Counted from the stretch's first letter, positions 4,753-43,943 are shown. The stretch: 64,000 bases of DNA from Mobula birostris (GCF_030028105.1 NC_092382.1:3316175-3380174), one strand, 5' to 3'. Notes: a model not told the origin generated them from the letters alone. A program made the numbers and translations.

Positions 4753-5651
4753 TTATCTACACAGATGGCCATTTAATGTAAACACATACTTCATTCCATT
4801 CCTCAGCTCTTCTCTGAATTTCCTCTGTGCCAGTGTATAGATACAAGTATTGGTGCACACGCTGAGAATTAACAACATTAACCCAAATTGCTGTAGGATG
4901 TATACCGGGGAACTCAAATATCTGTCCTGGTAAAAATAGTTTTGCAGTTGCCATTTCAGGGAATGGGCTACATAGGGCATCCAAAATAATATGAAATTAG
5001 CTGATACAGAAAACAGCGAAATCATCGACTTTCTGCGTTTTTCCACCTCGGCATCTTTCTGATTGTCGCTGCTGTGCCGAAGCCTTCTGCGGACTCTAAT
5101 TGCAGCAACGATATGTCTTACGGTTAACCCGTTAAACACCAGGATTAAGCCGATTGGTAGCAATGGTTTTAAAATACTGTCCAGTAATGCGTATCCTCTC
5201 CACACGGGTGAAGTGGCGTATTCATATGTGCCGGTGCACCGCCACGGCGTGTTGTCAATGATGACGTAAGGTTCAAGGGCAAAGTAAACCGGGGCACATC
5301 TCCCGCAGCTCACTATAACCACGGTCACGATAACCACCGTTGCTGTTCTCTCGGTGCAGTATCGCTCCCGCAGCTTTCGGCAACATATTGCGATGAAGCG
5401 ATCGAAGGTAAAACTGACCGTAAACCAAACAGAACAGTCCGTCATTATGACCCGAAATACAAGTGTCAGAGCGCATACAGGAGTGATGAGCAGGGATCTG
5501 GAATAAATGTAGATATTGTTGGTCTGTTCTACTAAAGCAACAACGATAACTACCATCAGATCCGCTGTTGCCATTCCAACCAGGTAACGGGTGATGCATT
5601 TGGAGAGTCCGCATTTTCCCCGAGAAAGGATCACAATCGCTGTTAAGTTAA
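4753..5651 (-). CDS. GPR139/GPR142-like class A GPCR, gene A, exon 2 (spliced protein 322 aa)
   Basis: Acceptor tttcttgcag|TT AAC. Motifs: TM2 MATADL, TM3 DCSVWFTVSFTFDRFIAIC, TM5 PLLP, TM6 FWMP, TM7 NTCIY, helix 8 KFREEL. Stop at 4753-4755. Confidence 0.93.
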
Positions 5652-6371
5652 CTGCAAGAAATTTGGAAACAAAATAGAAATATGGTCAGCTCCCTGAATG
5701 CCCCCATTCTACCGATGCGACGCAGGGTATGGTCTGTTTGGAAGTGAAAAGCGGGATTCCAGCGTGTGCGGTCTCCGTCGCTGCACTCCGGCTGGAGGAC
5801 AATGACGGATGTGAGTGTCGGTGGATTGGCGACCTTCCGACGGTTTAAAGCGAGGCATCCGAGTTCCACGACTCACGTACCGGTGAGCAGTCGATCGCTC
5901 CTGTAAACAACATCTTTTCCATTATTAGAGGTGAAATAGCTGAAGGAATTGTTTGTAGCGGTGACAAAGTGGAGTCAAGGAGATATGAAGAATGAGTTCT
6001 CATTTACTGACTTACAGAAGAACAGACCTGCATGTCGAAAATAGACTAGACAATCATTTATATAAGCTGCCATGTTGTTATAAGGTCGAAGTGTCTGCAC
6101 TGATAGAGACTCGGACCTAGAAAATCAGAGACCAGCATCACTTCAGAAGGCCTAGCGAGGTGAAATTATGAAACAGTGACAATATCGACACCAGCTTAAT
6201 TGACAAAGGAAGAAGGCATTGCGATCGAAGCATAGAAAATGAAAATAATACAATCAGATGCCCGAATCGTCCATTCCGGAAACACGTTTCAGCCGATGGT
6301 AGCATCTGTGCGGATACCGCAGCAAAGTAACGACGGCCCCATACATAAAATAACCAGCTCCAGCATCTTAC

Positions 6372-6441
6372 CGGGGACACCAACCGCTACAAGTGTGGGA
6401 TAGTAAATGGCCGCGATGTAGTAAATCGCCGGATATCCCAT
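6372..6441 (-). CDS. GPCR gene A exon 1 (MGYPAIYYIAAIYYPTLVAVGVP+G)
   Basis: ATG at 6441, 70 nt, donor G|GTAAG at 6371. Phase-1 join to exon 2 gives ...GVP-V-NLTAIVIL in frame. Confidence 0.9.
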
Positions 6442-6516
6442 ATTCCGTCAGGAGCAGCGTTCAGTTGTACGGAACGTTTCAGCTGCTCAGATAGACTGGG
6501 GATCGGATTAGCAGAC

Positions 6517-6570
6517 TTTTATTGAGTTGAGAGCAAGTCTACTGAGGCAATTAGCGTGGCTATCACGTCA
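6517..6570 (-). promoter_or_regulatory. Putative gene A core promoter: AATAAAA TATA-like box plus CRE-like TGACGTG
   Basis: AATAAAA at 6523-6517, ~76 bp upstream of the ATG; TGACGTG at 6570-6564. Both are retained in the paralog (33760-33766, 33807-33813). Confidence 0.45.
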
Positions 6571-7479
6571 GGGACATTAGTGACAACCAACTGCACAAAC
6601 ACTTACGTTAAGTTATTTTGACTCACTCTGTCCCCGTGTCATGAATTTGACTCCTCAAGGGATATTGCAATCTATTTACTTCAAAACAAAACATGATGTG
6701 CTTTTTTCCATGTTATTTTCCATGATACCTGGCTTCAGCTATTTTAATAGTATATATATATTTAATATCTGTGTTGCTTTTAAAGTAGGCATTCATCTTG
6801 AAGTGGATTTATTTTGTAACATTTGAAGGAACACATTCGCTTCTGAAATTGAGGGATGGAGTTTGTTCTGACAGGTGGAATGGAGAACACTTCTTTGTTA
6901 AAGGGGAACATTCGCTCATTCTTTTCTTTCGCTCGTTCCCGTCATTCCGGGCGGTTTGAGTGATGGAAACCACAGTGACAATTGACAAGTGTTACAATAA
7001 AATACACTGCACTTATATTCCTCAAAACACTTTAATGTATCCACAGCGATATTCCAGAGACCTGTGGTCAAAGAGGGCACGTATCTTCGGGAAATTAGTG
7101 AGGGCTGTGGGCAGTTTGAAGAACAATGTTTTCCAGCGCACGCATGGGCCGTTCGGCAGGAACCTGACCTCTGCCAGTGAATGACTTGACCACCCCATAC
7201 CCGTGACCTGCGATGCAGTCTAATTAACTTTAAAGATATTTCATTCAAACCTGCCTCAATTCCACCACTATGTCTCCATCCATTCTCTGAACAAATAGCA
7301 AATAAAATCTGTGAACTATCCGCAGCTGTTCTATTATTAGGCACGAAATTGTATTTTTTCTCTTCTGATTTACTGTCAGGTATATTGCCTTTCGAGCGTC
7401 ACTATAAGTATGTGCAGAACAGCGGATGGCTTCAAGCTCACCTGTCAATCACACGTCTTCCTGCTCTTGCAGTGCATCG

Positions 7480-8935
7480 CTCCGTGACTATTGTGGTCTC
7501 GTACCGATGAGCGCCCTCGCCTTATTGGAGAGAGTCTCATCACTCTGTTTCCATTGGGGAACTCGTACTTATGTGCGGCCCTCGGTTGACTCGAGAAAGT
7601 ATCACCTCTACCTTCAAATCCATCCTTCCAATGTGAATCACTTCGTACCGTTTCGGATTGAACTTCACCTGTAACTTCAGAGCGCTGCTCTGCGTCCTGT
7701 CACTGTCCTGTTGTAACCTTCTATACCATCCATAATTCCACCAACTTCCACATGATCGGAAACACAGTAACCAATCTTCCATTTCCTCAACCAAATCATT
7801 AATAAAACACAAAAATGCCAGGGGTCTCAGAACAGAACTCTGTAGGAGACCACTGGCTGCCGACACCCATGAAGAAAACGCCCCATAACCAACGGTGTAG
7901 TGCATTCTGTGGGCGTCGGTTCTGATCCACCAGCTAACTTCAAACTTTTTGAAAGGCCTACCAATTTTAACCGTATCAAATACCCTATTAAAATCCATTC
8001 ATACCAATACAAATTCTCTTCCTTTATGAACGCGCTTTGTCACAATCTCACAGAACTCAGCCAGGCTCCGGAGACGTGCCCTGCGCCTCACAAAGCCATG
8101 TCGACTCTCCCTAATCACGTTTCTGCAAATCCTGTTTCTAAGATTCTCCTCCAATAGTTTGCCCAGCACTGAAGTAGGACTCATTGGGTTATAATTCACA
8201 TGGTTATACCTACAGCCTTTCCTGAACAAGACAATAATATTTTCCACGCTCCAATCCGCTGACACTACATCTGTGGTTGGTGATAACGCAAAGCTCAGCA
8301 CCAGTGGAGCAGCAATCTCTTCCCCCGCTTCCCACAGTAACCTGGGGTTTCTCGCCACCACACCAAGAGGACTTACCAATCCTAATATTTTTCAAAGGTT
8401 TCTGCACATCCTCTTTTTTAACCGCGACATGTTGCCGCACATAAGCCCTTTTAACGCTTCCTCGCAAACGTCAGGATCTCTCACTGGTGAAAGTTGAAGT
8501 AAACTCCTCATTAAGGACCTGACCTGCCTCCACCAACTCCAGCCACAAGTTTCATCTCTATCCCTGACCGGTCCGACCCTCAATCTAGTCATCCCTTTCC
8601 TCACATACATCTAGGATATCGTGGGGTTTTCCTTAATCCTCATGGAGGCTTTCTGTAGAGGGATCTTGTTCTCCTAATTCCATTCTCCATTTCGTCCCTG
8701 GCTGCCGTGTCCGATCCTAGCTTTCTAAACCTGGTCAGCATCTTTCTTCCTCTTGACCAGTTGATCCACATCTCTCTCAAACATGGTTCCTTCACCTATC
8801 CAGAGCCCTATGCAGGTGTTGCGTAAAATACCTTCTCATTCGCGGTGTATATTTTCCAGAGCGCACAAGTTCCCTGATTGATCTCTGAGATTCCGGCAAA
8901 ATGGCATCATAATGCCATTTCGCCAATTAATTACT
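7480..8935 (-). mobile_element. Degenerate CR1 LINE RT region
   Basis: ORF-track fragments with 'LFRKG', 'PTSVLGKLLE', 'HGF', 'MDF', 'QSSVLRPL..FINDL'; multiple frameshifts. Confidence 0.85.
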
Positions 8936-11495: not shown

Positions 11496-11499
11496 CAGT

Positions 11500-11743: not shown

Positions 11744-11802
<59 letters not shown>

Positions 11803-14140
11803 GCCTCTCTCTCTCTCTAGTACACCTTTCCCAGGCGTCTCTCTCCCTCTCTCTGCCTTTACCGTCCCAACATCCCAGTCATTCTGTTCACTTGATCTCT
11901 TTCCTTCCAGTACCTTTCCCACCCCAATTTCTTTCTACACTCCCATCTTTATTACCATCTGTCCCCCGTTCTGTCTCTTGAGCCCGATCTCTGTCCCCAT
12001 TCAAGTCCAACCCTCTCTCCCTCTGCTCTTTCTCTGAATCCTCAGTCTCTCTCCCCGTCTCATTCTCCCTCCCTACTTTCTCTCTCCTCAGCACTCCGGA
12101 CCCTCTGTTTCCCAGATTCTTTCCCTCTCCCAGTCTCTTCGCTCAGTCCCTACTTCTCTCTCTTTCTCACTGATCCCCCTAGGATCACACCCTCTCGTTT
12201 CTTCCTGCAGAGTCTCCCCGTGTCTTTCGTCTCCAATCCTTTCTTTCCACATTTTCTCTTCCCCGACCCTCGTTTTTCTCGGCCGCCTTCTCCCCTGTCT
12301 CTGTCGCTCCCGTGTCCTGCCCCCGACTCTCTCATTCCGCATTCTCTTTCACCAAGTTTCTTCCTCCCCAGTTTGTCTGAATCCACAGTAATTCCCTCTA
12401 CCCCTCAGTCTCTCTCTCTCACCCCAGGATCTCTGTGTCCCTCACTCCACTGCCACTCCTAAGTCGTCTTTCTCCTCCAATCTCTTTCTTCCCCAGTCTA
12501 TCTCTCCCCAAAATTGCTGTTTCCGCAGTTTATCGTCCCTCCCCCTTACCTTTTCTCCTAGTACTTCTCGTACCTCACTCGCTCTGCATTCTACCCCTCC
12601 TTGTCCTGTCTCTCTCTCTCTCTCTCTCGGAACACACAGTGTCTCTCACCCGACTCTCCCTATCCCCTCAGTCTCCCTCGCCTCGTCCCTCTCTACCCAC
12701 TGTCTCTATCCGGTCCTCCCTCTCCCCCAGTAACTCTATCCACCAGTCTCACCCTCTCTACGTCAGTCTCTCTTTACCCAGTCTTTCTCACATCTATCTC
12801 TCTGCCCAGTGTCTCTCTACCCAGTCTTTCTTACTTCCCACTATCTCTCTGCAACAATTTCGCTTTCATCACATTCTCCCTCTGCCGTGTCTCGACCATC
12901 TCTCTTCCTGATTCTCTCTACCCTGCTTTCTCTTCCAGTTTGGTCCCCTAATCTGAGGAAGGAGATTCTTGCCATATAGCGAGTACAAAGAAGGTTCACC
13001 AGACTGATTCCTGGGATGGCAGGACTTTCATATGATGAAAGACTAGATCGACTAGGCTTATACTCGCTGGAATTTAGAAGCTTGAGGGGGGATCTTATTG
13101 AAACGTATAAAATCCCATAGGAATTGGACAAGCTAGATGCAGGGAGATTGTTCCCGATGTTGGGGAAGTCCAGAACGAGGGGTCACAGTTTTTAGGACCG
13201 AGATTAGGGAAATCTTCTCCACACAGAGAGTGGTGAATCTGTGGAATTCTCTGCCACAGCAAACAGTTGAGGCCAGTTCATTGGCTATATTTAAGAGGGA
13301 GTTAGATTATGTCCCTTGTGGCTAAAGGGATCAGTGGGTATGGAGGGAACGCTGGTACAGGGTTCTGAGTTGGATGATCAGCCATGATCATACTAAATGG
13401 CGATGCAGGCTCGAAGGGACGAAGGGCCTACTCCTGCACCTATTTTCTATGTTTCTATGTTTCTATGTTTATCTCATCGTTCTTCTTTCCCCCAGACTAT
13501 AACCTCTAGTCTGTCTCTCTATCCATCTGTCTTTCTGTAACCCCCAGTTTCTTCGCCATCCCACCAGTCTCTTCGCAGAGACACTCTCTCCTTTGTCTGT
13601 CTTTCCAGCTCACTNNNNNNNNNNNNNNNNNNNNNNNNNNNNNNNNNNNNNNNNNNNNNNNNNNNNNNNNNNNNNNNNNNNNNNNNNNNNNNNNNNNNNN
13701 NNNNNNNNNNNNNNNNNNNNNNNNNNNNNNNNNNNNNNNNNNNNNNNNNNNNCTCTGTCCCCCAGCCTCCCTCCCTGACTACTCCTTCTTCCCACAATCT
13801 CTCTCTCCGTGACCTATCCTCCCCAGTCTCTCTCTCTCTCTCGCGGCCAACTCTCTCCTCGTCACTCTCCTTTCGGCTCACTCTCCCAGTCTCCTTTCGC
13901 ACGAGTATCTCCGCCCCCTTGTCTTACTCTTTCCAAAGTCTCTCTGTCACCCGTGTCTGTTCTTCTAGGCTTTCTCATATCCCCCACTATGTCAGCGTCA
14001 GTCTGTTTCTCACCGCAGGCTCCTTTTCGCCTCCGATTCTCTCCATTCCTCAGTTTCTCTCCTCAAAGCCCCAGTCTCTCGCTCCCTTGTCTCTCTGACA
14101 CTTCGGCCCCTCTCCCGGACTCTCTCGCTCTCTCCGCGCC
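11500..14140. repeat. Long CT-rich low-complexity region with (CT)n tracts; interrupted by a CR1 and an N gap
   Basis: Direct reading. Confidence 0.85.
12938..13470 (+). mobile_element. 5'-truncated CR1 LINE with (ATGTTTCT)n tail
   Basis: Encodes the 'WSPNLRK..', 'QRVVNLWNSLP' ORF2 C-terminus; tail at 13445-13470. Confidence 0.9.
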
Positions 14141-16383: not shown

Positions 16384-17020
16384 AGAAACATAGAAAATAG
16401 GTGCAGGAGTAGGCCATTCGGCCCTTCGAGCCTACACCACCATTTATTATGATCATGGCTGATCATCCAACTCAGAACCCTGTACCTGCCTTCCCTCCAT
16501 ATCCCCTGACCCCCGTAGCCACAAGGGCCATATCTAACTCCCTCTTAAATATAGCCAATGAACTGGCCTCAACTGTTTCCTGTGGCAGAGAATTCCACAG
16601 ATTCACCACTCTCTGTGTGAAGAAGTTTTTCCTCATCTCGGTCCTAAAAGGCTTCCCCTCTATCATCAAACTGTGGCCCCTCGTTCTGGACTTCCCCAAC
16701 ATCGGGAACAATCTTCCTGCATCTAGCCTGTCCAATCCCTTTAGGATTTTATAAGTTTCAATCAGATCCCCCCTCAATCTTCTAAATTCCAACGAGTACA
16801 AGCCCAGTTCATCCAGTCTTTCTTCATATGAAAGTCCTACCATCCCAGGAATCAATCTGGTGAACCTTCTTTGTACTCCCTCTATGGCAAGGATGTCTTT
16901 CCTCAGATTAGGGGACCAAAACTTCACGCAATACTCCAGGTGTGGTCTCACCAAGGCCTTGTACAACTGCAGTAGTACCTTCCTGCTCCTGTACTCGAAT
17001 CCTCTCGCTATAAATGCCAG
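16384..17020 (-). mobile_element. Young 5'-truncated CR1 LINE inserted at the 3' end of GPCR B, same orientation
   Basis: Uninterrupted ORF2 C-terminus 16472-16966 (YKALVRPHLEYC...QRVVNLWNSLP); (ATGTTTCT) tail at ~16384-16396. Confidence 0.93.
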
Positions 17021-17917
17021 TTAGTTTGTTAATAAGTTGAATAATTGACGAGAGCGGATATTTCGCTGCGCTGATGAACTGCTCTCGGAACTTGGACTGC
17101 GTCACCCCATAAATAAACCTGTTTGTGCAGCAACTTAATATCATCAGCATGTATCCGGTATGTTGAAACATATATTCCGAATCGTTGTAATACTTTGGGT
17201 CGAGCCCGGCAATGATGTCATAAAGAAATTCGGCAACACTCACCGACCACAGGATGATGAAGCTTCCGGAGATGGTGAGAAGTAAGATCACAGACCTCCT
17301 CCTGCTCTTCATCTCTGGGTCACTGCGGTTCTCCGCCTTGCTCTGACCCCTCAGCCCCTTACGGACGCGACTGGTCACTAAAATGTGCCTGACTGTCAGA
17401 GCGTTGAGCAGCAGTATTAACACGAACGGTAATAACGGCGCTAGAACGGTAGAAAGCCAGCTATATCTCACCCACCAAGGATCGGTAAAGTAGCTCGATT
17501 TACGAATGCAACGTATATTGTCAATCACTTTCACAGCTCGATACATAAAGAAGTAGGGCACATTTTTAAAACAGAGCAGAACGCCGGTTGTTGTCAGAAC
17601 TACAGCCTCAGTTTTCCCGGTGCAATACTTTGCCTTCAGCCTCTGGCAACAGATGGCGACAAACCGATCCAACGTAAAAGTGACAGTGAACCAGACAGAA
17701 CAGTCTGAGGCAGCCCTTGCCGGGACAGCAATCGAACTGCATACGGGGGTCATCTCCAGGAATGAACCGGGGAAGTAATAATAACTGACCCGCCACAATA
17801 TAACCTGAAAGATGATGGTTAGTAGATCCGCCGTTGCCATGGCCACCAGGTAGCGAGTGGTGCAGGTGGAGAGGCTGCACTTTCCCCGGGACAGGATCAC
17901 AATCGCTACTAAATTCA
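16908..17917 (-). CDS. GPR139/GPR142-like GPCR, gene B, exon 2 (spliced 358 aa; last 37 aa CR1-derived)
   Basis: Acceptor tttctgcag|TG AAT. Motifs: MATADL, DCSVWFTVTFTLDRFVAICC, PLLP, ILW, NRFIY, KFREQF. The reading frame continues into the CR1 to a stop at 16908-16910. Confidence 0.88.
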
Positions 17918-19280: not shown

Positions 19281-19347
19281 CAGGAACACCAATAACGGCA
19301 ATAATCAAGTAATATATCGTTCTCACACGGTAAAATGTTTCAAGCAT
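19281..19347 (-). CDS. GPCR gene B exon 1 (MLETFYRVRTIYYLIIAVIGVP+G)
   Basis: 67 nt, donor G|GTAAG at 19280, phase-1 join in frame. Confidence 0.88.
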
Positions 19348-29175: not shown

Positions 29176-31864
29176 TTAATCTTTTTCACCATACACGTGA
29201 CCAAAAGAATTGTGTCACCTTGCAAGAAGTGATTTCCAGGAATTAATGCAAAATTCTGAGGCTGCATATCTTTCCCAAGTTCTATAAAGTGTTAGTGTAT
29301 GTGAGCCTCATCTCTCCACATCTTAATCTCCTAATTCTTTAGAATACGTGCTCAGGCCTTTTGCTTGGAAGTTGTTTATTCTGTACTCTACAACTGCCTG
29401 CGATGGTTTTGAAGGAAGAAAAGTGTGAGCAGGGATGCTTGCTTTGCTGTCGCTGCGTTTTTAGTTTGTTTAGTTGTGTATGTTTCATTTATTATTGATT
29501 CCAGAGGGAGACACGGATTCCACACCAGCCATGTGGATTCAGGGTTAAATAGATCGAAATCTGAACGCATCGACACCCGACACGGTAAAACTACGATTCA
29601 GAGGTAAATGGGCATTAGGATAAATTGGTGTGTAGTTGAATTGGGAATTTGTAATTGGCATTTTGGACGGCTGGTTCGTTTAATGAGCACCAATAGCTGC
29701 TGGTCAACACTTTAACATGTTGATTTTAAGTTGCAGGACTCCGTTGGAAAAGATTGTTTCGAAGTCATTTGCAATCAGTAGTTCAGCGAATTGCTTATAT
29801 CGTCAGCACTAATTCTATAAATTATCCAGCCGCTGCTGGGTGGTCAGATTAAATCAGTTATTTCCCTCAGTCCTATTTCTCGGAGCACTGTAACTGCAGA
29901 TGCCAAATATAGTTGTAAATTGTACCGAAATTTCGATCCTCCTTGTGGAACACGGCTGCCCGCTGCCTTCCGGCCAGAATTCACTCTAATCATCTGCCTT
30001 CTGTGAGTAACCCAATTGTGAACCAACCAGCCAGGTTTCCCTGTGTCCCATGCCTCCTGACTTTCTGAATGAGTCCACAATGGGGAACTGATCAAACGCC
30101 TGACCAAAATTAATGCACCCAGATCGACAGTTCTGATTCTTCTGTTTGTTTTAATTTCACTTTTTCAAATAATTCTGTCTGGCTCAGAAAGGACAACATG
30201 CCATGTTGTCTCTCCGTAGCCAGACTACGTTTCTCCAAATTCTCATTAATTTCCTCTTCAATAATCCTCTCCAGTAGTTTACCCACTACTGATGTAAGAC
30301 TCCCTGGTCTATAATTTCAAGAAGTGTAGCTGTTATCTTTCGTCAACAAATGAATAACTTTTTCCAACCTCCAATCATCTAGGTTTACCTCTGTGGCCAG
30401 CGAAGACACAAATATCCTGTCCAAATCTCAGCAGTAACTTCGCTCGCCTTCCAAAATTACCTTAACTATATCCCTTCCTATATCGGGGAAATCATCCATC
30501 ATAATGTTTTCCAAGTTTCCAGCGCATCCTCTTTCTCAGCGTCGGCATGATCTGGCGTATCTGCCTTTTTACGATGTGTTCACATTCATCAATGTGTTCA
30601 GTGAGGAGCTTCACTTTCTCCTTGGACTCCAGACACGAGTTTTCCTCTGATCTGCCCACACTCTCTCCAGTCTCCTCCTGCTCTTCACAGAGCAACTCCT
30701 CCAAGGACTTCTCAACCCCGCTTCTAAGGCTGCAAAGTCCATTGTTAAATTCTTTCACGTCCGCATTGTGACTCGTCATAACCCTATCTGATTCTCTTTT
30801 CCTAATTCTTAAGTATCTTTCTTTCTTCCTCTTGAATCGTTCTAATCTTCTTGTCTCCCAGGGTAACTTTACGCTATCATCCTTTCCCTTCCTCAAAGAG
30901 ACAAGCCTATACTGAACTCCATGTCATTGTTCCTTCAAAAATCTCCACATATCTGTTGCGCGTTTCCCTGAGTACACCATTTCCCAATTTACCTTCCCAA
31001 GTTCCTGTCAGGTAGCCCCATAATTCGCAGAGGCCCAATTAAATACATTCCATGCTCCCTGGTCCTATCTCCGTGCAAGGTAAATGTCGGCGAGTTCGGC
31101 CCTATCGTCCTGAAATGCTGACCCGCGGAGAGATCTGTCACCTGATCCGTTTCCTTTTCTAATATTAGATCCAGTCTGGACTGTTCGCTATCCGCCTGTC
31201 TTCTTATAGTGACATGAATCCTTCCTGGACACAACTGAGAAATTATGCCATAGCTAAACCTTTTACCCTGGGGAGGTGCCAAAGAATATTGTGGAAGTTT
31301 CATTTACCCGTGCCAATAGCATGACACGTGTCGATGTTCCCCTCCCAATCGGTTCCTCGCTGTTCCCTTTGCGTTTTTTTTTTGTTAATCTGGTGGGGGG
31401 AGTGCTGTATAGAATTCTCCAAATGGGGTGATCGCGCCCTTCAAATTTCTGTGTTCGTCTCACAGTCTATTAACAAACGAACGCTCCACGTTGTCCTCTC
31501 TTTCTGCATCTGCGATACCATCCCTGATCTGCCATCGCACTCCCTTTGCACTCTGTTACCCGACCCTCTCCATCTTTCAACTTCAAAAACACGGAAAGAC
31601 CTGCAGCCATTCCTGCCGTGTGATAGTTGAGTGTCTGTGATAGTTTGTAACATACCTCAACCATTGTAACAAACACGGCAGCAGCATTGAACGTTTGTAT
31701 TGCTACCGACCTATTCTGTATGAGGTCAGCAATCTTCCGCCAATTCTACAATTTCAGGATAAGCAGGCATATGACTGTTTGGGTTTATGACATATTTGCC
31801 AACCCTGTTCATTGGAAAACGGCTTTATTTGAAAACTCCGCTGAATTGCCATTGGAGGCGCGCG

Positions 31865-32763
31865 TTATCTACACAGATGGCCATTTAATGTAAACACATA
31901 CTTCATTCCATTCCTCAGCTCTTCTCTGAATTTCCTCTGTGTCAGTGTATAGATACAAGTATTGGTGCACACGCTGAGCAATAGCAACATTAACCCAAAT
32001 TGTTGTAGGATGTATACCGGGGAACTCAAATATCTGTCCTCGTAAAAATAGTTTTGCTGTTGCCATTTCAGGGAATGGGCTACATAGGGCATCGACAATA
32101 ATATGAAATTAGCTGAAATAGAAAACAGCAAAATAATCGATTTTCTGCGTTTTTCCACCTCGGCATCTTTCTGATTGTCACTGCTGTGTCGAAGCCTTCT
32201 GCGGACTCGAATTGCCACAACGATATGTCTTACGGTTAACCCGTTAAACACCAGGATTAAGCCGATTGGTAGCAATGGTGTTAAAATACTCCCCAGTAAT
32301 TGGTATGCTCTCCACACGGGTGAAGTGGCGTATTCATATGTGCCGGTGCACCGCCACGGCGTGTTGTCAATGATGACGTAAGGTTCAATGACAAAGTAAG
32401 CCGGGACACATCTCCCGCAGCTCACTATAACCACGGTCACGATAACCACCGTTGCTGTTCTCTCGGTGCAGTATCGCTCCCGCAGCTTTCGGCAACATAT
32501 TGCGATGAAGCGATCGAAGGTAAAACTGACCGTGAACCAAACAGAACAGTCCGTCATTATGACCCGAAATATAACTGTCAGAGCGCATACAGGAGTGATG
32601 AGCAGGGATCTGGAATAAATGTAGATATTGTTGGTCTGTTCTACTAAAGCAACAACGATAACTACCATCAGATCCGCTGTTGCCATTCCAACCAGGTAAC
32701 GGGTGATGCATTTGGAGAGCCCGCATTTTCCCCGAGATAGGATCACAATGGCCGTTAAATTAA
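31865..32763 (-). CDS. GPR139/GPR142-like GPCR, gene C, exon 2 (spliced 322 aa; close paralog of A)
   Basis: Acceptor tttcttgcag|TT AAT; same 899-nt length as A exon 2; FDRF and NTCIY motifs. Confidence 0.93.
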
Positions 32764-33614
32764 CTGCAAGAAAATGGAACAAAAAAGAAATACCTTCAGT
32801 GGCAACTCTCTGAATGCCTATTCTAAAGATGCTGTGCAGGGTATGGTCTGTTTGGAAGTGGAAAGCTGATATCTAATCGCAGGTAAATTAACCTCGAGAA
32901 ACTGGAAAGCAAAAGAGAAGAATGGTCAACAGCAACTCTCTGAATGCCCCTAGGTCTGGTCTGTTTGGAAGTGGAAAGCGGGAGTCCAGTGTGTGCGGTC
33001 TCGGTCGTTGCACTCCGGCTGGAGGACAATGACGGATGTGAGTGTCAGCGGATTGGCGACCTTCCCACAGTTTAGAGCGAGGCATCAGAGTTTCACGACT
33101 CACGTACCGGTGAACGGACGATCATCCCAGTAAACAAGACAATTTCTATTATTAGAGGTGAAGGAGTTGAAGGGATTGTTTGCAGCGGTGACAAAATAGA
33201 ATCAAAACATACAAAGCACAATTTATCATTTATTGACTTATATAAGAGCAGCCCTACGTGTCGAAAATGGACTGGACAGTCATTTATATCAGCTGCCACG
33301 TTGTTATAAGGACGAAGTGTCTGCACTGATAGAGACTCGGGCCTAGAAAAGCAGAGACCAGCATCACTTCAGAAAGCCTAGCGAGGTGAGATTGTGAAAC
33401 AGTGACAATATCGGCACCAACGTAACTGACAAAAAAAATCACATCGATTAAAGTCCGAAAATGAAAATAAAACAATCAGATGCCTGAACCCTCCATTCTG
33501 GAAACACGTTTCAGCCGACGGTCGCATCTGTGCTCAGTAAGAGTGCGGATCCCGCAGCAGAGTAACAGCAAGACGACGGCACCGTACATAAAGTAACCAT
33601 CTCCGGCATCTTAC

Positions 33615-33684
33615 CGGGGACACCAACCGCTACAAGTGTGGGAAAGTAAATGGCCGCGATGTAGTAAATCGCCTGATATCCCAT
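33615..33684 (-). CDS. GPCR gene C exon 1 (MGYQAIYYIAAIYFPTLVAVGVP+G)
   Basis: 70 nt, ATG at 33684, donor GTAAG at 33614. Confidence 0.9.
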
Positions 33685-35439
33685 ATTCCGTCAAAAGCAG
33701 CGTTCAGTTGTACGGAACGTTTCAGCTGCTCAGATGGACTGGGCATCGGTTTAGCAGACTTTTATTGAGGTGAGAGCAATTCCACTGAGGCAATCAGCGT
33801 GGCTATCACGTCAGGGACATTAGTGACGACCAACTGCATAAACACTTATGCAAAACTATTTTTACCCACTGTCCCCGTGTCATGAATTTGACTCCTGAAT
33901 GGATATTGCAACAATGTACTTTAAAACAAAATATGATGTGAGATTCCCATGTTATTTTCCATGATACCTGGCTTCAGCTATTTAAATAGGATATATTTAT
34001 ACGTGTGCTGCTTTTAAAGTAGACATTCTTCTTGAAGCCGACTTCTTTTGTAATATTTGACCGTGCACATTCGCTTCTGAAATTGAGAGAAGGAGTTTGT
34101 TCCGTCGGGGGAATGGAGCAAACTTCTTTATTACAGGAGAACATTCTTTCATTCTTTTCTTTCGTTCGTTCCCGTCATTCCGGGCGCTTTGAGAGTTGGA
34201 AATGAGAGTGACAGCTGACATGTGTTACAATCAAATACACTGCACATATTTCTCCAAACAGTTTAAAAGATCCACAGCGATATTCCAGAGACCTGTGATC
34301 AAAAAGGGAACGTGCCCTCAGGAGATTCGCGAGAACTGTGGGCAGTTTGAAGAACAATGTTTTCCAGTGCACATGGGCTGTCTGGCAGGAACCTGACCTC
34401 TACCGGTGAATGACCTGACCACCTCATACCCGTGACCTGCGATGCAGTCTATTTAACTTTAAACATATTCTCAAACCTGCCACAATTCTACCACTATTTC
34501 TCCACCCATTCGCTCTTTGAATAAAAGTAGCAAGTGAAATCTGTGAAATATCCACAGGTTCCCAGGCTGTCTTATTACTTGCCGTTAAGTTGTTTTTTCT
34601 CCTGATTTACTGTCAGGTATATTGCCTTTCGAGCGTCACTATAAGAATGTGCAGAACAGCGGATGGGTTCAAGCTCACGTGTCAATCACACTTCTTCCTG
34701 CTCTTGCAGTGCACCGCTCCGTGCCTATTGGGATATTCGTAGCGATGAGCGGCCCTCGCCTTATTGGAGGGAGTCTCATCACTCAGTTTCCCTTCTGCAA
34801 CTCGTATTGTTGTGTGGCTCTCGGTTGACTCGAGAAAGTATCACCTCTGCCTTCAGATTCATCCGTCCCAAATGAATCATTTCGTACCTTTCCGTGTTGA
34901 ACTCCATCTGTAACTTCTCAGCGCTGCCCTGCGTCCTGTCACTGTCCTGTTGTCATCTGTGACAAACTTTTGTACTCTCCATAATTCCACCAACCTCCAC
35001 ATCATTGCAAATACAATAAACCACCCTTCCACCTCCTCATCCAAATCATTCATAAAAACTCAAAAAGCCGGGGGTTTCAGAACAGATCTCTGCAGGACTC
35101 CACTGGTCGCCGACATCCAGAGAGAAAACGCTCCATCCACAACTATCCTCTGCCTTCTGTGAGCGTCAGTTCTGAATCCATCAGCCAACTTTCTCTGGAT
35201 ACCAAACCTTCTGACGTTATAATTGGTCCTACCATGGATATGTTTAACGCCTTGTTAAAATCCATTCATGTCAGATCAATTATCGCCCACTTTATTTCCA
35301 GAAGACCACCAAATAAACACGTTCTCCCATCTGTTTCTCTCTTCCATTGTCTCCGCTTTGGCTCGGGCGAGAGCAAAGATGTGAACTGTCCTTATCCTCT
35401 GTGAAAAAACTGGAAGTGGTTGTTCAACTCACTGTGAGG

Positions 35440-38947: not shown

Positions 38948-39254
38948 CTATGCGGTTGACTAACAATTAGCGTGGAAAATGATTCCGGGCCGAATGGTCT
39001 GTTTGCCAAATGACTCTACGACGCTGAATGTCCAGCTCAATACAACCGTCTTCATTCATATCACAATTATAACATAAACCGACTGCAGGAGACGCTTGTT
39101 CTAACAATAGCTCAGGGAATACTGAATCTATATTAAGATTATTTACTAGGTTTCAGGAACAGCGGGAAAGAAGGAGAAAAAATACTCTCGCTCACAGTGA
39201 ATCAGGTCTCACAGGCACAGGACAGGGGCGACACACGTAACGGTGGAGCCAAAG

Positions 39255-40590
39255 CAGACAAATACAAAAGGAAACCCACACCCCCACAATGTAAGAGAGA
39301 CTGACAGATACAGAATGAAACCCACACTCTCACACTGTAACAGAGACTGACGGATACAGAATGAAACCCACACCCCCACAATGTAACAGAGACTGACAGA
39401 TACGGAATGAAACCCACACTCTCACACTGTAACAGAGACTGACAGATACAGAATGAAACCCACACTCTCACACTGTAACAGAGACTGACAGATACAGAAT
39501 GAAACCCACACTCTCACACTGTAACAGAGACTGACAGATACGGAATGAAACCCACACTCTCACACTGTAACAGAGACTGACAGATACAGAATGAAACCCA
39601 CACTCTCACACTGTAGCAGAGACTGATAGATACAGAATCAAACCCACACTCTCACACTGTAGCACAGACTGACAGATACAGAATGAAACCCACACTCTCA
39701 CACTGTAGCAGAGACTGACAGATACAGAATGAAACCCACACTCTCACACTGTAACAGAGACTGACAGATACAGAATGAACCCCACACTCTCACACTGTAA
39801 CAGAGACTGACAGATACAGAATGAAACCCACACTCTCACTCTGTAGCAGAGACTGACAGATACAGAATGAACCCCACACTCTCACACTGTAACAGAGACT
39901 GACAGATACGGAATGAAACCCGCACTCTCACACTGTAACAGAGACTGACAGATACGGAATGAAACCCACACTCTCACACTGTAACAGAGACTGACAGATA
40001 CAGAATGAAACCCACACTCTCACTCTGTAGCAGAGACTGACAGATACAGAATGAAACCCACACTCTCACACTGTAACAGAGACTGACAGATACAGAATGA
40101 AACCCACACTTTCACACTGTAGCAGAGACTGACAGATACAGAATCAAACCCACACTCTCACACTGTAACAGAGACTGACGGATACAGAATTAAACCCACA
40201 CTCTCACACTGTAGCAGAGACTGACAGATACAGAATGAAACCCACACTCTCACACTGTAACAGAGACTGACAGATACAGAATGAAACCCACACTCTCACA
40301 CTGTAACAGAGACTGACGGATACAGAATGAAACACACACTCTCACACTGTAGCAGAGACTGACAGATACAGAATCAAACCCACACTCTCACACTGTAACA
40401 GAGACTGACGGATACAGAATTAAACCCACACTCTCACACTGTAGCAGAGACTGACAGATACAGAATGAAACCCACACTCTCACACTGTAACAGAGACTGA
40501 CAGATACAGAATGAAACCCACACTCTCACACTGTAGCACAGACTGACAGATACGGAATGAAACACACACACTCACACTGTAACAGAGACT
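39255..40590. repeat. 46-bp minisatellite, ~29 copies (GACTGACAGATACAGAATGAAACCCACACTCTCACACTGTAACAGA)
   Basis: Period read directly (39301 to 39347); degenerate copies continue to ~40780. Confidence 0.95.
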
Positions 40591-41179
40591 GGTGTGTATG
40601 TACAATATGAAATGCACACTCTCACAATGAACCAGGGAGTAAGATTTAAAGAACCCCACACTCTCATTCTGCACCAGGGACTGATATCTATAAAATGATC
40701 CCCACACTGTCACATTGCACCGGGGACTATTCCTCTACACTCTACCGGCGACAGGCAGGTGGAGAATGAAACCCACACTCTTATATTATCCGACTGAATG
40801 TCTCCCGTTTGTCGACTGTCTCTACATTGCTGTCGTTCTCTCTCACTAATTCCGCATTTTATGTCAACTGCATATTAACCCTCTCTTCATTTTCACCTTG
40901 AAACCGACTGCAGGCTCAGTCCTTTCCTCTCCCTGGCAGACTGGCCGATTACTCTGTTCTCCCAATTTACTGTTCTTATTTCATTCTGCTGTGAATAATT
41001 CTTGTTTCTACAACATGGCCTTGCAGCTATTTCAATGTCGCTTCTGTTTCCTCAATCCCTTCATCGATATGCCGACCCCACCGTGAAACATCGTGTTCAA
41101 CACGTTCGGACTGGGAAGAGAAAGGCATCAACTGGGAGATCGACAAAGAATCTAATACATGTATCGACGTTCATTTGCC

Positions 41180-41212
<33 letters not shown>

Positions 41213-42215
41213 GTGTACTAATAATGGTTTTAATATGGTTTTATGTGATGTTGTGGCCCTATTTGTCGGTCCTGCATTTATATCTGCCGGGCACTGCGAA
41301 GGGAATGCCAAGGACACGGGCATTTTTATGTCAAACCATGAGAAGAATCGGAATGGAATCTACAGATGGCAGAAAGTATTTTGTTAAATTATGCCGGTAT
41401 TCACACCAGGGAGAAACGTGTTGATGGTTGTGCTCTTGACCCACAGGACAGTGAATAGTAGCCTTATCAGCCTATTGTATTCCTACAGCTAATTGAACAA
41501 AACAGTGTTTCAGTATCTAAATGTCCCTCAGGTGGATTCAACATCGGCTTTGTCCGTCAGTTTACCGTTTCAAAATCCACACCACGAGTAGTAAATTTTA
41601 TACATATTCGTTCTAAGATGTATATGAGGTACACACTTACACACTTAACATTAACATCTTAATACACATTTTTCCCTGAATCAATTTCTTTCTGAATTCT
41701 AACTTCGAAAGTAACCTGGTGACTCTGTAATATCGTTACTGGTACTTATTTGCATTAAAATTGGTGTTGATACAATGCTTTCTATTTTTTCTCTGTCTCT
41801 GGTACAGCAGCCGATAACGTCTGTAATGCTGGGGTCATTGGTTTGCATTTCGCGCTGCATACCTGCCAACATCTGTGTTTGCTACTGACTCGGTAACAGT
41901 GCAAACAGTGACGGTTTGCGCCAGAAAAAAAAACATAAATGTAATGTTTCCTATCCAGAAAAAATAATCACCGGAGCAACGTAAGTGAATCATATTAAAG
42001 GTGCGTCATCACAGAGAAATAACAAGGGAGAGACTTCATGTTGGAGTGGAATCAGCGCTGATGAGGTGGACTCGACTGGTGTTGCGTCCAGTTCAATGAA
42101 ATAAGGCGTGTTATTTCCCCATTGGCGTTACGGTTCGCTAAAGTAGAGAAATAACTGCTAATTACAAGCACCAGTCACTGTACAAATTGTTATCATTATT
42201 GGTACCCGATTGTTC

Positions 42216-42230
42216 TATAAAAGTACGTCA
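42216..42230 (+). promoter_or_regulatory. Putative gene D TATA box with adjacent CRE half-site
   Basis: TATAAAA at 42216-42222 and ACGTCA at 42225-42230. Confidence 0.45.
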
Positions 42231-42453
42231 TTTTGTGCTTCAGCTACATTTCGGACGGAAGCATTCAGACGCGGTGGACTCTCAACAACGTGTGATCGGT
42301 GAAGCGTTTTACCCAGTAGGCGCACAGAAATTTGCTACCGGGGCTTTGTTATAACTGTTTGAGTTTAATTACTGGCTATTTACAACTTTTATGACATTTA
42401 GAAATTGGGAACATTCGGAACAGAACTGTAAATACTAACAGTCTGGATTAACA

Positions 42454-42508
42454 ATGCTTGATGAGAGGACTATTTGTTACACAGTGATTATAATCGTCGG
42501 TATCCCGG
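42454..42508 (+). CDS. GPCR gene D exon 1 (MLDERTICYTVIIIVGIP+G)
   Basis: 55 nt, donor G|GTAAGT at 42509, phase 1. Confidence 0.82.
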
Positions 42509-43017
42509 GTAAGTACCTTTCTGTTACTTATGCAGAAGCAGAGACCTCACGCTGTTCTCAGCTGCTGCTGATGTGATTTTAATCGATGTTTACAGAGTCA
42601 TTAATAATATTTAAAATACTCCTGGACGGTCTGACAAATGTGAAAGCCTTAGAGATGTGATCCAAACGCGAACAAACGAGACCGGCTCAGATGGCCATGT
42701 CGGTCAGCATGGAGATATTGGACCGATGGGCGCGTTTCTGTGCTCTATCATTCCTGGACTCTGCTCATCGCTGCTGCATCCGTGATCGTGAGGAGATAAT
42801 GTGAGCATGTGCTACTTACTGTAAAGCGCTTTATGCTGCGGTCAGGTTTTCAAACAAGCCGCATAAACACAGGTGTTCTTTACTTCCACTGATAATGTCC
42901 AGCAGAGATGAACGATGGATTTTATTTCAAGCGAACAAATCATGGCTGTATTTCTACGCAAAATTCGTTTGATTTTCCTTATTCTTATTTTTGGTCTTTT
43001 TTTCTGTTTCACTGTAG

Positions 43018-43943
43018 TTAACCTTGTGGCAATCATCATTCTCTGCCGAGGAAAATGCGGTCTCTCCAAATGTATCACGCACTACCTGGTGGCGATGGCC
43101 GCGGCGGATCTAATGGTGGTGATGATCGAAGTCCTGTTCTACCGGATGGGTGAAGCGTACAGACTTTACCGAGTCCTGGACAACGCTCCGTTCTGCCTTG
43201 TCCACTACGTCATGTGTCACGTGGCCGTTGATTGCTCCGTCTGGTTCACTGTCGCCTTCACTTTCGATCGCTTTGTGGCCATTTGCTCGGCTAAACTTAA
43301 AACAAAATACTGCACCCCCAAAATCGCGGGTTTGGTGATTGGCGCTGTATTTGTCGGTCTTTGTTTAAAAAACATCCCATTTTACTTCCTGTATATGGAA
43401 ACGACAGGTTTTTTGAAGGGTAACTGGGTCTGTTTCGGTAGACCCGCACTTGCTTTCTCGGGATCGTTTGAGGGGTTTTATTGGGTGGACCGTCTGTTGA
43501 ATCCGCTACTTCCCTTCTTCCTCATTTTGACCCTCAATGCTCTGACCGTCAGACAGATACTGGCGGCGAGCAGAGTCCGCAGGGGACTCAAGGGACGGGG
43601 AAATTGCGGGAAACAGCGAGATCCGGAGATGGAGAGTCGGAGACAATCCATCATTCTGCTCTTCAGCCTGTCGGCGAGTTTCCTTCTCTGTTGGGCGACA
43701 AGCACTCTGGTCTTCATTCTCATGCGATGCCTCTACACAGACCTGGAAATGTCTATTCGGCTTTTTCAGGCACAGTTTTGGGGTTCTGTGATTCAGAATT
43801 TCAGCAGTTGCACGAATACCTTTATTTACGGAGTGACCCAGACAAAATTCAGAGAACAGTTGAAAGTTGTTCTATTCTACCCCGCTATTTTAGTTTGGAA
43901 ACATTTTAGAAGTCTGTACCGCTCAGTTGAAAGGGTGAAATAA
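43018..43943 (+). CDS. GPR139/GPR142-like GPCR, gene D, exon 2 (spliced 326 aa)
   Basis: Polypyrimidine tract and tag|TT AAC acceptor. Motifs: MAAADL, DCSVWFTVAFTFDRFVAIC, NPLLP, LCW, NTFIY, KFREQL. TAA at 43941-43943. Confidence 0.92.

What the first reader, a model, noticed from the sequence alone, without database searches (positions are those of the whole stretch)
4753..43943. Cluster of four intact GPR139/GPR142-like receptors organised like a chemosensory repertoire
Seen: four 322-358 aa class A GPCRs in 39 kb. All share one gene structure (55-70 nt coding exon 1, phase-1 GT-AG intron after TM1 G[VI]P) and the signature xRGKCxLSxCxTxYLVxMAxADL / DCSVWFTVxFTxDRFxAIC / Nx[CF]IY in place of NPxxY. 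N-termini are very short with no N-glycosylation sequon. The ECL2 to ECL3 regions are strongly divergent between A/C, B and D, while the cytoplasmic faces are conserved. Known: mammalian GPR139 and GPR142 are single-copy receptors activated by aromatic amino acids (L-Trp/L-Phe). Inference: a lineage-specific birth-and-death expansion into a multigene sensing repertoire (amino acid, peptide or other external cues), architecturally like OR/V1R/TAAR clusters but from a different GPCR branch. This is the best candidate for an undescribed system here.
Basis: partly seen in the sequence, partly recalled or inferred. Interest (0 to 1): 0.85.

Follow-up and report, generated by a model that had tools for sequence, protein, structure and literature searches.

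The report
Manta ray orphan receptor gene cluster
Four working receptor genes in manta ray DNA belong to a very large, unstudied receptor family of sharks and rays that varies mostly on its ligand-facing side, as smell and taste receptors do, but where the genes are used is still unknown.

Summary
Four intact two-exon class A GPCR genes lie at 4753-43943: A 322 aa, B 358 aa, C 322 aa, D 326 aa. All have a 55-70 nt coding exon 1 and a phase-1 GT-AG intron after G[VI]P. The N gap (13615-13752) is intergenic.

The window is Mobula birostris; gene C equals the protein annotated 'probable GPR139'.

- **Family size:** two searches gave 1479 and 2236 relatives (E<=1e-5). Every named one among the 240 listed rows is a shark or ray.
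- **Not GPR139/GPR142 orthologues:** identity to human GPR139 is about 22%, and its ligand-contact residues are not kept. They do share clan traits with it: no P7.50, G-x-P-x-N in TM1, two exons.
- **Tree:** the family is one clade (99/98). Its sister is a salamander gene (100/99). It is separate from a conserved gnathostome paralogue that sharks also have.
- **Old lineages:** A/C, B and D belong to three separate lineages.
- **Variation:** the extracellular side is 25% identical, the cytoplasmic side 65%. The young pair A/C has 17.5 nonsynonymous to 2.5 synonymous changes outside, against 5 to 12 inside.
- **Expression:** not shown; the read tools were inconclusive.
- **Literature:** no paper found describes the family.

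The scan noted this family before on other DNA of this genome (28 notes). A sensory role stays an inference.

The parts
4753..5651 (-). Gene A, exon 2 (TM1 end to stop); with exon 1 gives 322 aa
   Evidence: ORF; acceptor AG 5653-5652 read; Pfam 7tm_1 E 7.9e-24; frame and length
6372..6441 (-). Gene A, coding exon 1 (70 nt, 23 codons + 1 base), donor GT at 6371-6370
   Evidence: tblastn of P0001 residues 1-35
16908..17917 (-). Gene B, exon 2; with exon 1 gives 358 aa
   Evidence: ORF; acceptor read; Pfam E 4.7e-20
16908..17020 (-). Repeat-derived last ~37 codons and stop codon of gene B
   Evidence: self-blastn: 16383-17020 matches 56863-56228 (78%), and 16382-16920 matches 12939-13458 (88%). 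Family proteins end about 3 aa after B exon-2 residue 297
19281..19347 (-). Gene B, coding exon 1 (67 nt), donor G|GTAAGA
   Evidence: same length and pattern as N-termini of P0223 and P0190
31865..32763 (-). Gene C, exon 2; with exon 1 gives 322 aa, identical to P0001
   Evidence: Pfam E 6.3e-23
33615..33684 (-). Gene C, coding exon 1 (70 nt); intron 33614..32764 (851 nt)
42454..42508 (+). Gene D, coding exon 1 (55 nt), donor G|GTAAGT
   Evidence: same length and pattern as N-termini of P0121 and P0122
43018..43943 (+). Gene D, exon 2; with exon 1 gives 326 aa
   Evidence: Pfam E 7.3e-20
2702..7940 (.). Copy 1 of the segmental duplication that carries gene A
   Evidence: self-blastn: 2702-5752 vs 29809-32866 is 93% identical; 5726-7940 vs 32953-35191 is 84%
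29809..35191 (.). Copy 2 of the segmental duplication that carries gene C
13615..13752 (.). Assembly gap (N), intergenic between A and B; cuts no gene model
31824..31829 (-). AATAAA 36 nt after the stop of gene C (same spacing after gene A, 4712-4717)
   Evidence: a motif match only

Best explanation
Shown: these are four intact genes of a very large class A GPCR family confined, as far as the searches show, to sharks and rays. The family belongs to the GPR139 clan but is not orthologous to GPR139 or GPR142. It descends from an old jawed-vertebrate paralogue that otherwise turned up only in salamanders. The window holds members of three old subfamilies (A/C, B, D) plus one young duplication (A/C).

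Inferred mechanism: each protein is a seven-helix receptor with almost no extracellular N-terminus. A small ligand would bind in the pocket formed by the outer halves of TM2-TM7 and the ECL2 hairpin, which is the part that differs between paralogues. The signal would pass through conserved switches (D2.50, S3.39, DRF, W6.48, N7.49, Y7.53, helix 8 F-R) to a common cytoplasmic face, which includes a nearly invariant ICL1 motif R-G-K-C-G-L-S-K-C, and so to a shared G protein or partner.

Inferred role: gene number, clustering, turnover and pocket diversification make a repertoire for many different external or foreign chemical cues (a chemosensory-type family) the most likely role. The tissue and the ligands are not shown.
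For: Intact models with consensus splice sites.

Family size and range:
- 1479 proteins at E<=1e-5 of 3230 candidates and 2236 of 3892.
- 227 of the 234 different proteins listed carry a name, and all 227 are elasmobranch.
- 110 clusters at 50% identity reach E<=1e-30.
- 14 further representatives that fall in this family were named, all elasmobranch.

Tree of 58 rows: family 99/98; family plus salamander gene 100/99; conserved paralogue clade with its own three shark orthologues 100/99; A/C, B and D in separate clades, each 100/99 or 100/100.

Conserved switches: 17 invariant and 59 nearly invariant columns in 130 sequences.

Variability:
- Entropy is 1.88 bits on the extracellular side and 0.94 on the cytoplasmic side (Mann-Whitney p 4e-17); ICL1 is 0.26 bits.
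- Within the window the two sides are 25% and 65% identical.

A versus C: dN/dS is 0.47 overall, 2.1 on the extracellular side (17.5 nonsynonymous, 2.5 synonymous) and 0.13 on the cytoplasmic side (5 and 12). Fisher p is about 0.0009 on rounded counts.

Structure: the AlphaFold model has pLDDT 86.2 and pTM 0.83, with seven helices, an ECL2 hairpin and helix 8.

Long-term constraint: D keeps 74 of 74 conserved columns and is about 70% identical to skate and cow-shark proteins.

Background from papers (passages read): cartilaginous fishes are reported to have few GPCRs and few olfactory receptors (PMC8455134).
Against: - No expression evidence. No listed sequencing run is on record as RNA.
- The contigs laid on gene C show no spliced junction, and one 383-nt contig runs unspliced from the intron into exon 1.
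- A variable outer half with a conserved inner half is common to many GPCR families, so it is not specific to chemoreceptors.
- The A/C counts are small (37 differences in 894 nt).
- B is an outlier (7 of 74 conserved columns changed, tail from a repeat). C lacks W6.48 and A has lost an invariant Leu. Some copies may be drifting.
- No shared upstream motif of 8 bases or more was found among the three subfamilies.
- The catshark sensory-organ paper found no GPCR among the 50 most specific 'brain and olfactory epithelium' genes (PMC11979771, passage read). Single receptors of a large repertoire would not be expected there anyway.
- True GPR139 and GPR142 could not be put in the tree.
Confidence: 0.55

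Rival explanations
1. An immune or barrier-tissue sensing repertoire. The receptors would sit on leukocytes or epithelia and detect microbial or host-damage molecules, as formyl-peptide, chemokine-like or MRGPR expansions do in mammals.
For: The birth-and-death pattern and the fast-changing outer face fit immune receptors as well. After GPR139, the family profile's next solved hits are chemokine receptors: CCR5 at E 1.1e-15, then CCR2 and CCR1. Earlier scan notes place other clusters of the family next to NLR and MHC-like genes (leads, not tested here). C2H2 zinc-finger arrays, typical of fast-evolving regions, flank this cluster.
Against: No expression data either way. No immune gene lies in this window. 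Chemokine and formyl-peptide receptors have longer N-termini that take part in ligand binding; these proteins have almost none. The CCR5 score is below that of GPR139.
Confidence: 0.25
2. Receptors for internal signals, like GPR139 and GPR142 themselves: amino-acid, nutrient or neuropeptide receptors in brain, gut or pancreas that multiplied in elasmobranchs.
For: Clan kinship with GPR139: best solved relative by profile at E 3.5e-18, shared lack of P7.50 and shared G-x-P-x-N in TM1, and a two-exon gene (PMC7318219, passage read). GPR139 and GPR142 are reported to respond to L-Trp and L-Phe (same paper).
Against: The three polar JNJ-63533054 contacts of GPR139, E108(3x32), R244(6x51) and N271(7x38) (PMC12775434), align to a variable column, to Tyr and to a variable column. 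Hundreds of divergent pockets are not expected for a few internal ligands. GPR139 orthologues are 70% identical from human to zebrafish, whereas paralogues 10 kb apart here are 45% identical.
Confidence: 0.1
3. Mostly idle copies. The family spreads by segmental duplication in repeat-rich DNA, and many copies are intact only because they are young.
For: A and C lie on a young 5.3-kb duplication, and each has lost one highly conserved residue. B has a repeat-derived tail and the most departures from the consensus. In the protein collection only C has a near-identical Mobula birostris entry. The best matches to the D query and the best other matches to the C query were 71% and 86%.
Against: The cytoplasmic side of A/C has dN/dS 0.13. 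D keeps 74 of 74 conserved columns and has about 70% identical relatives in skates and in a cow shark. No frame-shifted or truncated copy was found in this window.
Confidence: 0.1

Closest known systems
GPR139 and GPR142 (mammalian orphan class A receptors for aromatic amino acids)
   Same: GPR139 is the best solved relative of the family profile (E 3.5e-18, 68.8 bits). TM7 reads N-x-x-x-Y without the proline, TM1 has G-x-P-x-N, and there is a D-R-Y/F motif. Both have a two-exon gene (PMC7318219).
   Different: About 22% identity. A single family sequence scores PAF receptor and 5-HT2B as well as GPR139. The GPR139 contact residues are not kept. N1.50 is residue 20-25 here, against residue 44 in GPR139 as worked out from the alignment, so about 20 N-terminal residues are missing. 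There are hundreds of copies instead of one. The ICL1 C-x-L-S-K motif is absent from GPR139.
Conserved non-mammalian 'GPR139-like' gene (coelacanth P0343 group; possibly the GPR210A/B of PMC6504862, link not verified)
   Same: About 30% identity, E 2.6e-29. It shares the ICL1 C-x-L-S-K motif, lacks P7.50 and has G-I-P-x-N. A phase-1 intron at the same TM1 position is inferred: unspliced database ORFs depart from the spliced models exactly there and read Ala, as a final intron G would give.
   Different: It forms a separate clade (100/99) that roughly follows the species tree and has its own shark orthologues. The listing suggests roughly one copy per species; this was not counted. It has E-R-F instead of D-R-F and carries N-x-S/T sites in ECL2.
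Salamander gene (P0334 Pleurodeles, P0382 Ambystoma, P0385 Lissotriton)
   Same: It is the sister of the elasmobranch family in the tree (100/99) and the best non-elasmobranch hit of gene C (31% identity, E 4.2e-34).
   Different: It sits on a long branch (1.34). One 90% cluster holds proteins of three salamander species. It has Ser in place of N1.50 and D-R-Y.
Vertebrate class A chemoreceptor repertoires (OR, TAAR, V1R/ORA, T2R)
   Same: Tandem clusters of compact genes, lineage-specific clades, a variable pocket side and family-specific conserved cytoplasmic motifs.
   Different: There is no specific sequence kinship. Only the general 7tm_1 model, one family just above its cut-off (nematode Srx, proteins A and C only) and one below its cut-off (DUF7534) match, and TAAR13c is a low hit at E 2.4e-9. 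There are two coding exons instead of one. The N-terminus is nearly absent and has no glycosylation site. Expression in sensory cells is not shown.

Membership tests
Class A (rhodopsin-like) GPCR | Match to Pfam 7tm_1 above the curated cut-off | tested here: met
   72-85 bits against a cut-off of 30.5 for all four proteins
Class A (rhodopsin-like) GPCR | Seven transmembrane helices plus helix 8 | tested here: met
   AlphaFold model of gene C, pLDDT 86.2: seven long helices, ECL2 hairpin, helix 8; at least 500 Foldseek hits to GPCR structures
Class A (rhodopsin-like) GPCR | Conserved switches: N1.50, D2.50, C3.25-ECL2 disulfide, D/E-R-Y-type motif, W6.48, N7.49, Y7.53 | tested here: met
   Invariant or at least 90% conserved in 130 family members and present in the four genes, except W6.48 in C
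Class A (rhodopsin-like) GPCR | Proline 7.50 of NPxxY | tested here: not met
   Thr (Arg in B) at that position. The same lack is seen in human GPR139 and all clan relatives examined
GPR139/GPR142 (orthologues) | High identity to GPR139 (human-zebrafish orthologues are 70% identical, PMC7318219) | tested here: not met
   22% identity to 7vug_R; 29.5 bits for one sequence; 68.8 bits for the profile
GPR139/GPR142 (orthologues) | GPR139 is clearly the closest solved relative | tested here: inconclusive
   First by profile, but only 8 bits above CCR5. By single sequence the PAF receptor ranks first. By fold it ranks 30th. The bony-vertebrate kin hit GPR139 first by a wider margin
GPR139/GPR142 (orthologues) | Ligand-contact residues E3x32, R6x51, N7x38 (PMC12775434) | tested here: not met
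   They align to R90 (a variable column), Y250 and L281 (a variable column) of gene C. The mapping was done by hand from the printed alignment
GPR139/GPR142 (orthologues) | Two-exon gene with the intron at the same place | not testable with these tools
   The window genes have two coding exons. The paper says GPR139 has two exons but not where the intron lies. No GPR139 locus could be fetched
GPR139/GPR142 (orthologues) | Activation by L-Trp and L-Phe | not testable with these tools
   Needs a cell assay
GPR139/GPR142 (orthologues) | Placement with GPR139 and GPR142 in a tree | not testable with these tools
   No tool returned a true GPR139 or GPR142 sequence that could be passed on
Conserved non-mammalian GPR139-like gene (P0343 group) | Falls inside that clade | tested here: not met
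   Separate clades, 100/99 and 99/98; sharks have both
Conserved non-mammalian GPR139-like gene (P0343 group) | Shared ICL1 C-x-L-S-K motif and TM1 intron position and phase | tested here: met
   Motif. Intron: inferred from unspliced ORFs against spliced models, not read from a locus
Vertebrate chemosensory receptor repertoire (functional class) | Many clustered, lineage-specific copies with a diversified pocket | tested here: met
Vertebrate chemosensory receptor repertoire (functional class) | Expression in sensory cells, sparse and mutually exclusive | tested here: inconclusive
   No run on record as RNA; only short contigs, none spliced
Vertebrate chemosensory receptor repertoire (functional class) | Sequence membership in OR, TAAR, V1R or T2R | tested here: not met
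   No such Pfam family among the hits; TAAR13c is only a low hit, E 2.4e-9

The most novel reading that the evidence does not exclude
This family is a main, so far unrecognised chemoreceptor family of sharks and rays. It would be an independent class A odorant or tastant repertoire that grew from a GPR139-clan gene kept elsewhere only in salamanders, and it would fill the gap left by the very small OR, TAAR and V1R sets of cartilaginous fishes.
Probability: 0.3. Interest if true: 0.9.

Novelty: new variant of a known kind. Interest (0 to 1): 0.6.

Why it matters
Cartilaginous fishes are described as poor in GPCRs and in olfactory receptors (PMC8455134, passage read). How they detect the range of chemical cues they respond to is therefore open.

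A class A family with thousands of database proteins in about twenty elasmobranch species, hidden under the automatic label 'probable GPR139', would change that picture. It also gives a concrete gene set to test by RNA-seq, in situ hybridisation and ligand screens.

The tree adds an evolutionary point. The family is not a shark invention. It is the expansion of an old jawed-vertebrate paralogue that, among the bony vertebrates sampled here, turned up only in salamanders.

If the family turns out to be immune or internal, it is still one of the largest lineage-specific GPCR expansions in vertebrates without a described function.

Tried and rejected
Expression.
- The look-up of sequencing runs on gene C listed 23 runs. 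None is on record as RNA, and the best share of words was 0.28.
- Read laying of X1, X11, X2 and X4 on 31500-34000 gave only short Logan contigs.
- In X2 and X4 coverage is almost confined to the exon 2 coding sequence and stops at the stop codon. One X4 contig carries adapter letters there.
- I read this as matches from paralogues or related species, not as transcripts of gene C.
- No contig shows the 33614/32764 junction. One X2 contig skips 32774-32989 with AT..AG ends and 26 letters on its shorter side; I give it no weight.

Logan and ENA proteins as possible transcripts. Their N-termini read through the acceptor or start inside exon 2, so they are unspliced ORFs and say nothing about expression.

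Shared promoter motif. No k-mer of 8 bases or more is shared upstream of A/C, B and D. TATA-like and AATAAA matches are motif matches only.

Fold search. It gave a generic class A result and does not discriminate within the class.

Protein atlas. The nearest clusters are 'probable GPR139', then invertebrate FMRFamide-like and GHSR-like receptors. It is a lead only.

Literature. Eight searches found no paper describing the expansion (and the in-paper look-ups). The library lacks most subscription journals. The supplementary expression tables of PMC11979771 (its datasets S7 and S8) could bear on expression and were closed.

Rejected readings.
- A cluster of GPR139 orthologues (identity and pocket residues).
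- Derivation from the conserved paralogue within sharks (tree).
- A fifth copy or pseudogene in the window.

Full report
What is in the sequence.

Between 4753 and 43943 there are four long ORFs. All match the rhodopsin-family Pfam model at E 7.9e-24 to 7.3e-20. Each ORF lacks a proper start, because a short coding exon lies upstream. A pattern scan found one candidate exon 1 per gene, and I read the junctions in the DNA.

- Gene A: exon 1 6441..6372, exon 2 5651..4753, minus strand.
- Gene B: exon 1 19347..19281, exon 2 17917..16908, minus strand.
- Gene C: exon 1 33684..33615, exon 2 32763..31865, minus strand.
- Gene D: exon 1 42454..42508, exon 2 43018..43943, plus strand.

All four donors read G|GTAAG. 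All acceptors follow a pyrimidine tract. All introns are phase 1, right after the G-[VI]-P of TM1.

The models give 322, 358, 322 and 326 aa with one terminal stop each, and C is identical to the database protein P0001. That check joined the exons inside a script. The exon-1 peptides of B and D have the same lengths (22 and 18 aa) and pattern as the N-termini of annotated proteins of their clades.

The N gap at 13615-13752 lies in CT-rich intergenic DNA between A and B and touches no model. Its true length, and therefore the A-B spacing, are unknown.

tblastn with 120 family proteins found only these four loci at E<1e-3.

The three motifs are present in all four genes. No N-x-S/T lies in the N-termini. 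N1.50 is residue 20 to 25, so almost nothing precedes TM1. In human GPR139 the same Asn is residue 44, as worked out from the alignment.

Among A/C, B and D the extracellular side (outer helix halves plus loops) is 107/420 = 25% identical and the cytoplasmic side 261/402 = 65%. The divergence covers the whole outer half.

Nuances:
- The last ~37 codons and the stop of B lie in a repeated element. I did not verify the CR1 label given there.
- Of 74 columns at least 90% conserved in 129 other members, A departs at 2 (including an otherwise invariant Leu235), C at 2 (including W6.48 to Ser), D at 0, and B at 7. Seven is the family maximum; the median is 2.

Where the window comes from and how big the family is.

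Gene C is 100% identical over the 298 residues of exon 2 to a Mobula birostris protein named 'probable G-protein coupled receptor 139'. The whole spliced model equals that protein.

- The exon 2 ORF of C found 1479 proteins at E<=1e-5 among 3230 candidates.
- Exon 2 of D found 2236 among 3892.
- Of the 234 different proteins listed, 227 carry a name, and all 227 are sharks or rays of 18 species. The remaining 7 have no name.
- A full scan of 1.84 billion cluster representatives gave 939 hits at E<=0.001, 173 at 1e-10 and 110 at 1e-30.
- Fourteen further representatives that fall in this family were named, and all are elasmobranch.
- No chimaera protein appeared among the named ones. That is not proof of absence.
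- The automatic names vary (GPR139, GPR142, GPR15-like, capa receptor-like, vasopressin V2-like), which shows that the label is a best guess.
- Only C has a near-identical Mobula birostris entry. The D query found nothing above 71%, the C query nothing else above 86%, and B was not searched in the large collection. Annotation probably undercounts the family.
- The scan's own notes mention the family 28 times in this genome. I use those notes as leads only.

Relation to GPR139.

- A single sequence does not single out GPR139: PAF receptor 1.5e-06, GPR139 4.3e-06, 5-HT2B 6.1e-06.
- A profile of 130 members puts GPR139 first (3.5e-18, 68.8 bits) ahead of CCR5 (1.1e-15, 60.6 bits).
- Foldseek ranks neurotensin, TRH and cholecystokinin receptors first and GPR139 30th, at 22% identity.
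- GPR139 orthologues are 70% identical from human to zebrafish, and the gene has two exons (PMC7318219, passages read). So these are not GPR139 orthologues.
- The printed alignment shows that GPR139 also lacks the NPxxY proline and has G-L-P-A-N in TM1. All other clan relatives I aligned lack that proline too.
- The three polar contacts of GPR139 with the reference agonist JNJ-63533054, E108(3x32), R244(6x51) and N271(7x38) (PMC12775434, passages read), align to a variable column, to Tyr and to a variable column. I made this mapping by hand.

Closer relatives.

The best non-elasmobranch hits of gene C are a salamander protein (31%, 4.2e-34), a coelacanth protein (30%, 2.6e-29) and teleost proteins (28% and 26%). 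These hit GPR139 first in the PDB by a clear margin but far below orthologue level (1.8e-18, 3.7e-15, 2.6e-13).

The coelacanth protein belongs to a gene conserved at 46-66% identity in catshark, zebra shark, sawshark, sturgeon, teleosts, amphibians, turtles, lizards and snakes. One paper names coelacanth and fish GPR139/142-related orphans GPR210A/B (PMC6504862, passage read). I could not link its identifiers to this gene, and that study holds no cartilaginous fish.

A careful IQ-TREE of 58 rows gives these supports, ultrafast bootstrap / SH-aLRT. Of the rows, 40 belong to the family. They were sampled as every ninth leaf of a 212-row FastTree, plus chosen members. The tree is rooted on amphioxus.

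| Group | Support |
|---|---|
| Elasmobranch family | 99/98 |
| Family plus salamander gene | 100/99 |
| Conserved gene clade with its three shark orthologues | 100/99 |
| All three together | 97/90 |

A quick tree of 77 rows that also held two long invertebrate branches gave the same picture with lower support, 89 for each of the first two. True GPR139 and GPR142 are not in these trees, because no tool returned them in a usable form.

Two shared characters back the kinship with the conserved gene. The first is the ICL1 motif C-x-L-S-K. The second is the intron: unspliced database ORFs of that gene depart from the spliced models exactly before the residue that precedes N1.50, and they read Ala there, as a final intron G in phase 1 would give. 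That is an inference.

History of the cluster.

- A/C, B and D are about 45% identical to one another and fall in three clades, each 100/99 or 100/100.
- The D clade has a cow shark at its base and batoids inside. D is 70-71% identical to skate and cow-shark proteins.
- In this sample B is the only batoid in a shark-rich clade.
- A/C sit in a batoid-only clade.
- In the 212-row FastTree the shark and batoid labels need only 9 and 12 changes. This fits large lineage-specific bursts, but the rows were chosen by similarity to C and D.
- A and C lie on a direct 5.3-kb duplication, 2702-7940 and 29809-35191. It is 93% identical over the 3' flank and exon 2 and 84% over the intron, exon 1 and 5' flank.
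- Exon 2 differs at 37 of 894 bases and exon 1 at 2 of 70.

Selection.

Across 130 members, entropy is 1.88 bits on the extracellular side and 0.94 on the cytoplasmic side (p 4e-17). For the helix halves alone it is 1.76 against 0.89 (p 4e-12). ICL1 is the most conserved part, at 0.26 bits.

Between A and C, dN/dS is 0.47 overall. It is 2.1 on the extracellular side (17.5 nonsynonymous, 2.5 synonymous) and 0.13 on the cytoplasmic side (5 and 12). Fisher p is about 0.0009 on rounded counts. The counts are small. A variable outer half is common in GPCR families, so this supports ligand diversification but does not prove a sensory role.

Expression.

Not shown. No listed run is on record as RNA. 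The contigs laid on gene C are short. None shows the splice, and one runs unspliced from the intron into exon 1. Coverage confined to the coding sequence in two runs most likely reflects paralogues or related species.

An AATAAA lies 36 nt after the stops of A and C, and TATA-like matches lie 77-89 nt before all four starts, with a second one at -25 in D. These are motif matches only. No upstream k-mer of 8 bases or more is shared by the three subfamilies.

Literature.

Searches for GPR139 with shark, cartilaginous fish, elasmobranch, gene duplication, 'GPR139-like' and GPR210 found no description of the expansion. A broader search on olfaction in the catshark found none either.

The catshark sensory-organ paper (passages read) and the whale shark genome paper (passage read) do not mention the family. 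The whale shark paper stresses the paucity of GPCRs in cartilaginous fishes. Supplementary tables were closed and could hold expression values for these genes.

Verdict.

This is a real, large, clustered, diversifying receptor family from a branch other than the known chemoreceptors, and the literature searched does not describe it. It is a GPR139-clan family rather than 'GPR139/142-like' in the narrow sense. The cluster mixes three old lineages with one young duplicate. The sensory role remains an inference.

My ranking is:
- a chemosensory-type repertoire for external cues, 0.55;
- an immune or barrier sensing repertoire, 0.25;
- GPR139-like internal signalling, 0.1;
- mostly idle copies, 0.1.

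Noticed in passing
window 45830-46856 (-) and 62610-64000 (+): Two C2H2 zinc-finger arrays (84-bp repeat units) flank the receptor cluster on its right side. The ORF 45969-46628 matches zf-C2H2 at E 5.3e-47. The second array runs off the window end.
   Followed up: partly
window 39257-40591: Satellite of 29 copies of a 46-bp unit (94% matches) in the C-D intergenic region. A 65-bp repeat of 5 copies lies at 45413-45742.
   Followed up: no
window 27957-28415 (-), 55823-56497 (+), 16472-16966 (-): Retrotransposon fragments. Two ORFs match reverse transcriptase RVT_1 (E 2.5e-09 and 2.6e-11). Related copies are scattered over the window, and one of them supplies the tail of gene B.
   Followed up: partly
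window 32024-32026 (gene C, codon 247) and 5013-5015 (gene A, codon 235): Each of the two young duplicates has lost one highly conserved residue. C has Ser for W6.48 (Trp in 99% of 129 members). A has Ser for an otherwise invariant Leu in TM6.
   Followed up: partly
proteins P0334, P0382, P0385 (salamanders): A salamander gene is the sister of the whole elasmobranch family (100/99). It looks like the only bony-vertebrate remnant of that lineage seen in these searches.
   Followed up: partly
proteins P0343, P0393-P0510: A conserved 'probable GPR139' gene of sharks, ray-finned fishes, coelacanth, amphibians and reptiles is neither GPR139 nor GPR142. No mammal or bird appeared among the 120 rows listed. 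Two models are fused to TMEM183A, which hints that the two genes are neighbours.
   Followed up: partly
window 31864-32760, runs X2 and X4: Small public runs from several coded organisms hold short contigs at high word depth over the exon 2 coding sequence only. The kind of library is unknown (capture, RAD or RNA).
   Followed up: no
window 49760-50335 (+): An ORF with a match to ALKBH8_N (E 4.9e-08) lies among repeat fragments; its meaning is unclear.
   Followed up: no
family alignment A1, residue 95 of gene C: An Asp in mid TM3 (the D of D-C-S-V-W) is at least 90% conserved in the elasmobranch family. It is Asn in the conserved paralogue, Tyr in the salamander gene and His in GPR139. It could be a family-specific pocket or structural residue.
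   Followed up: no
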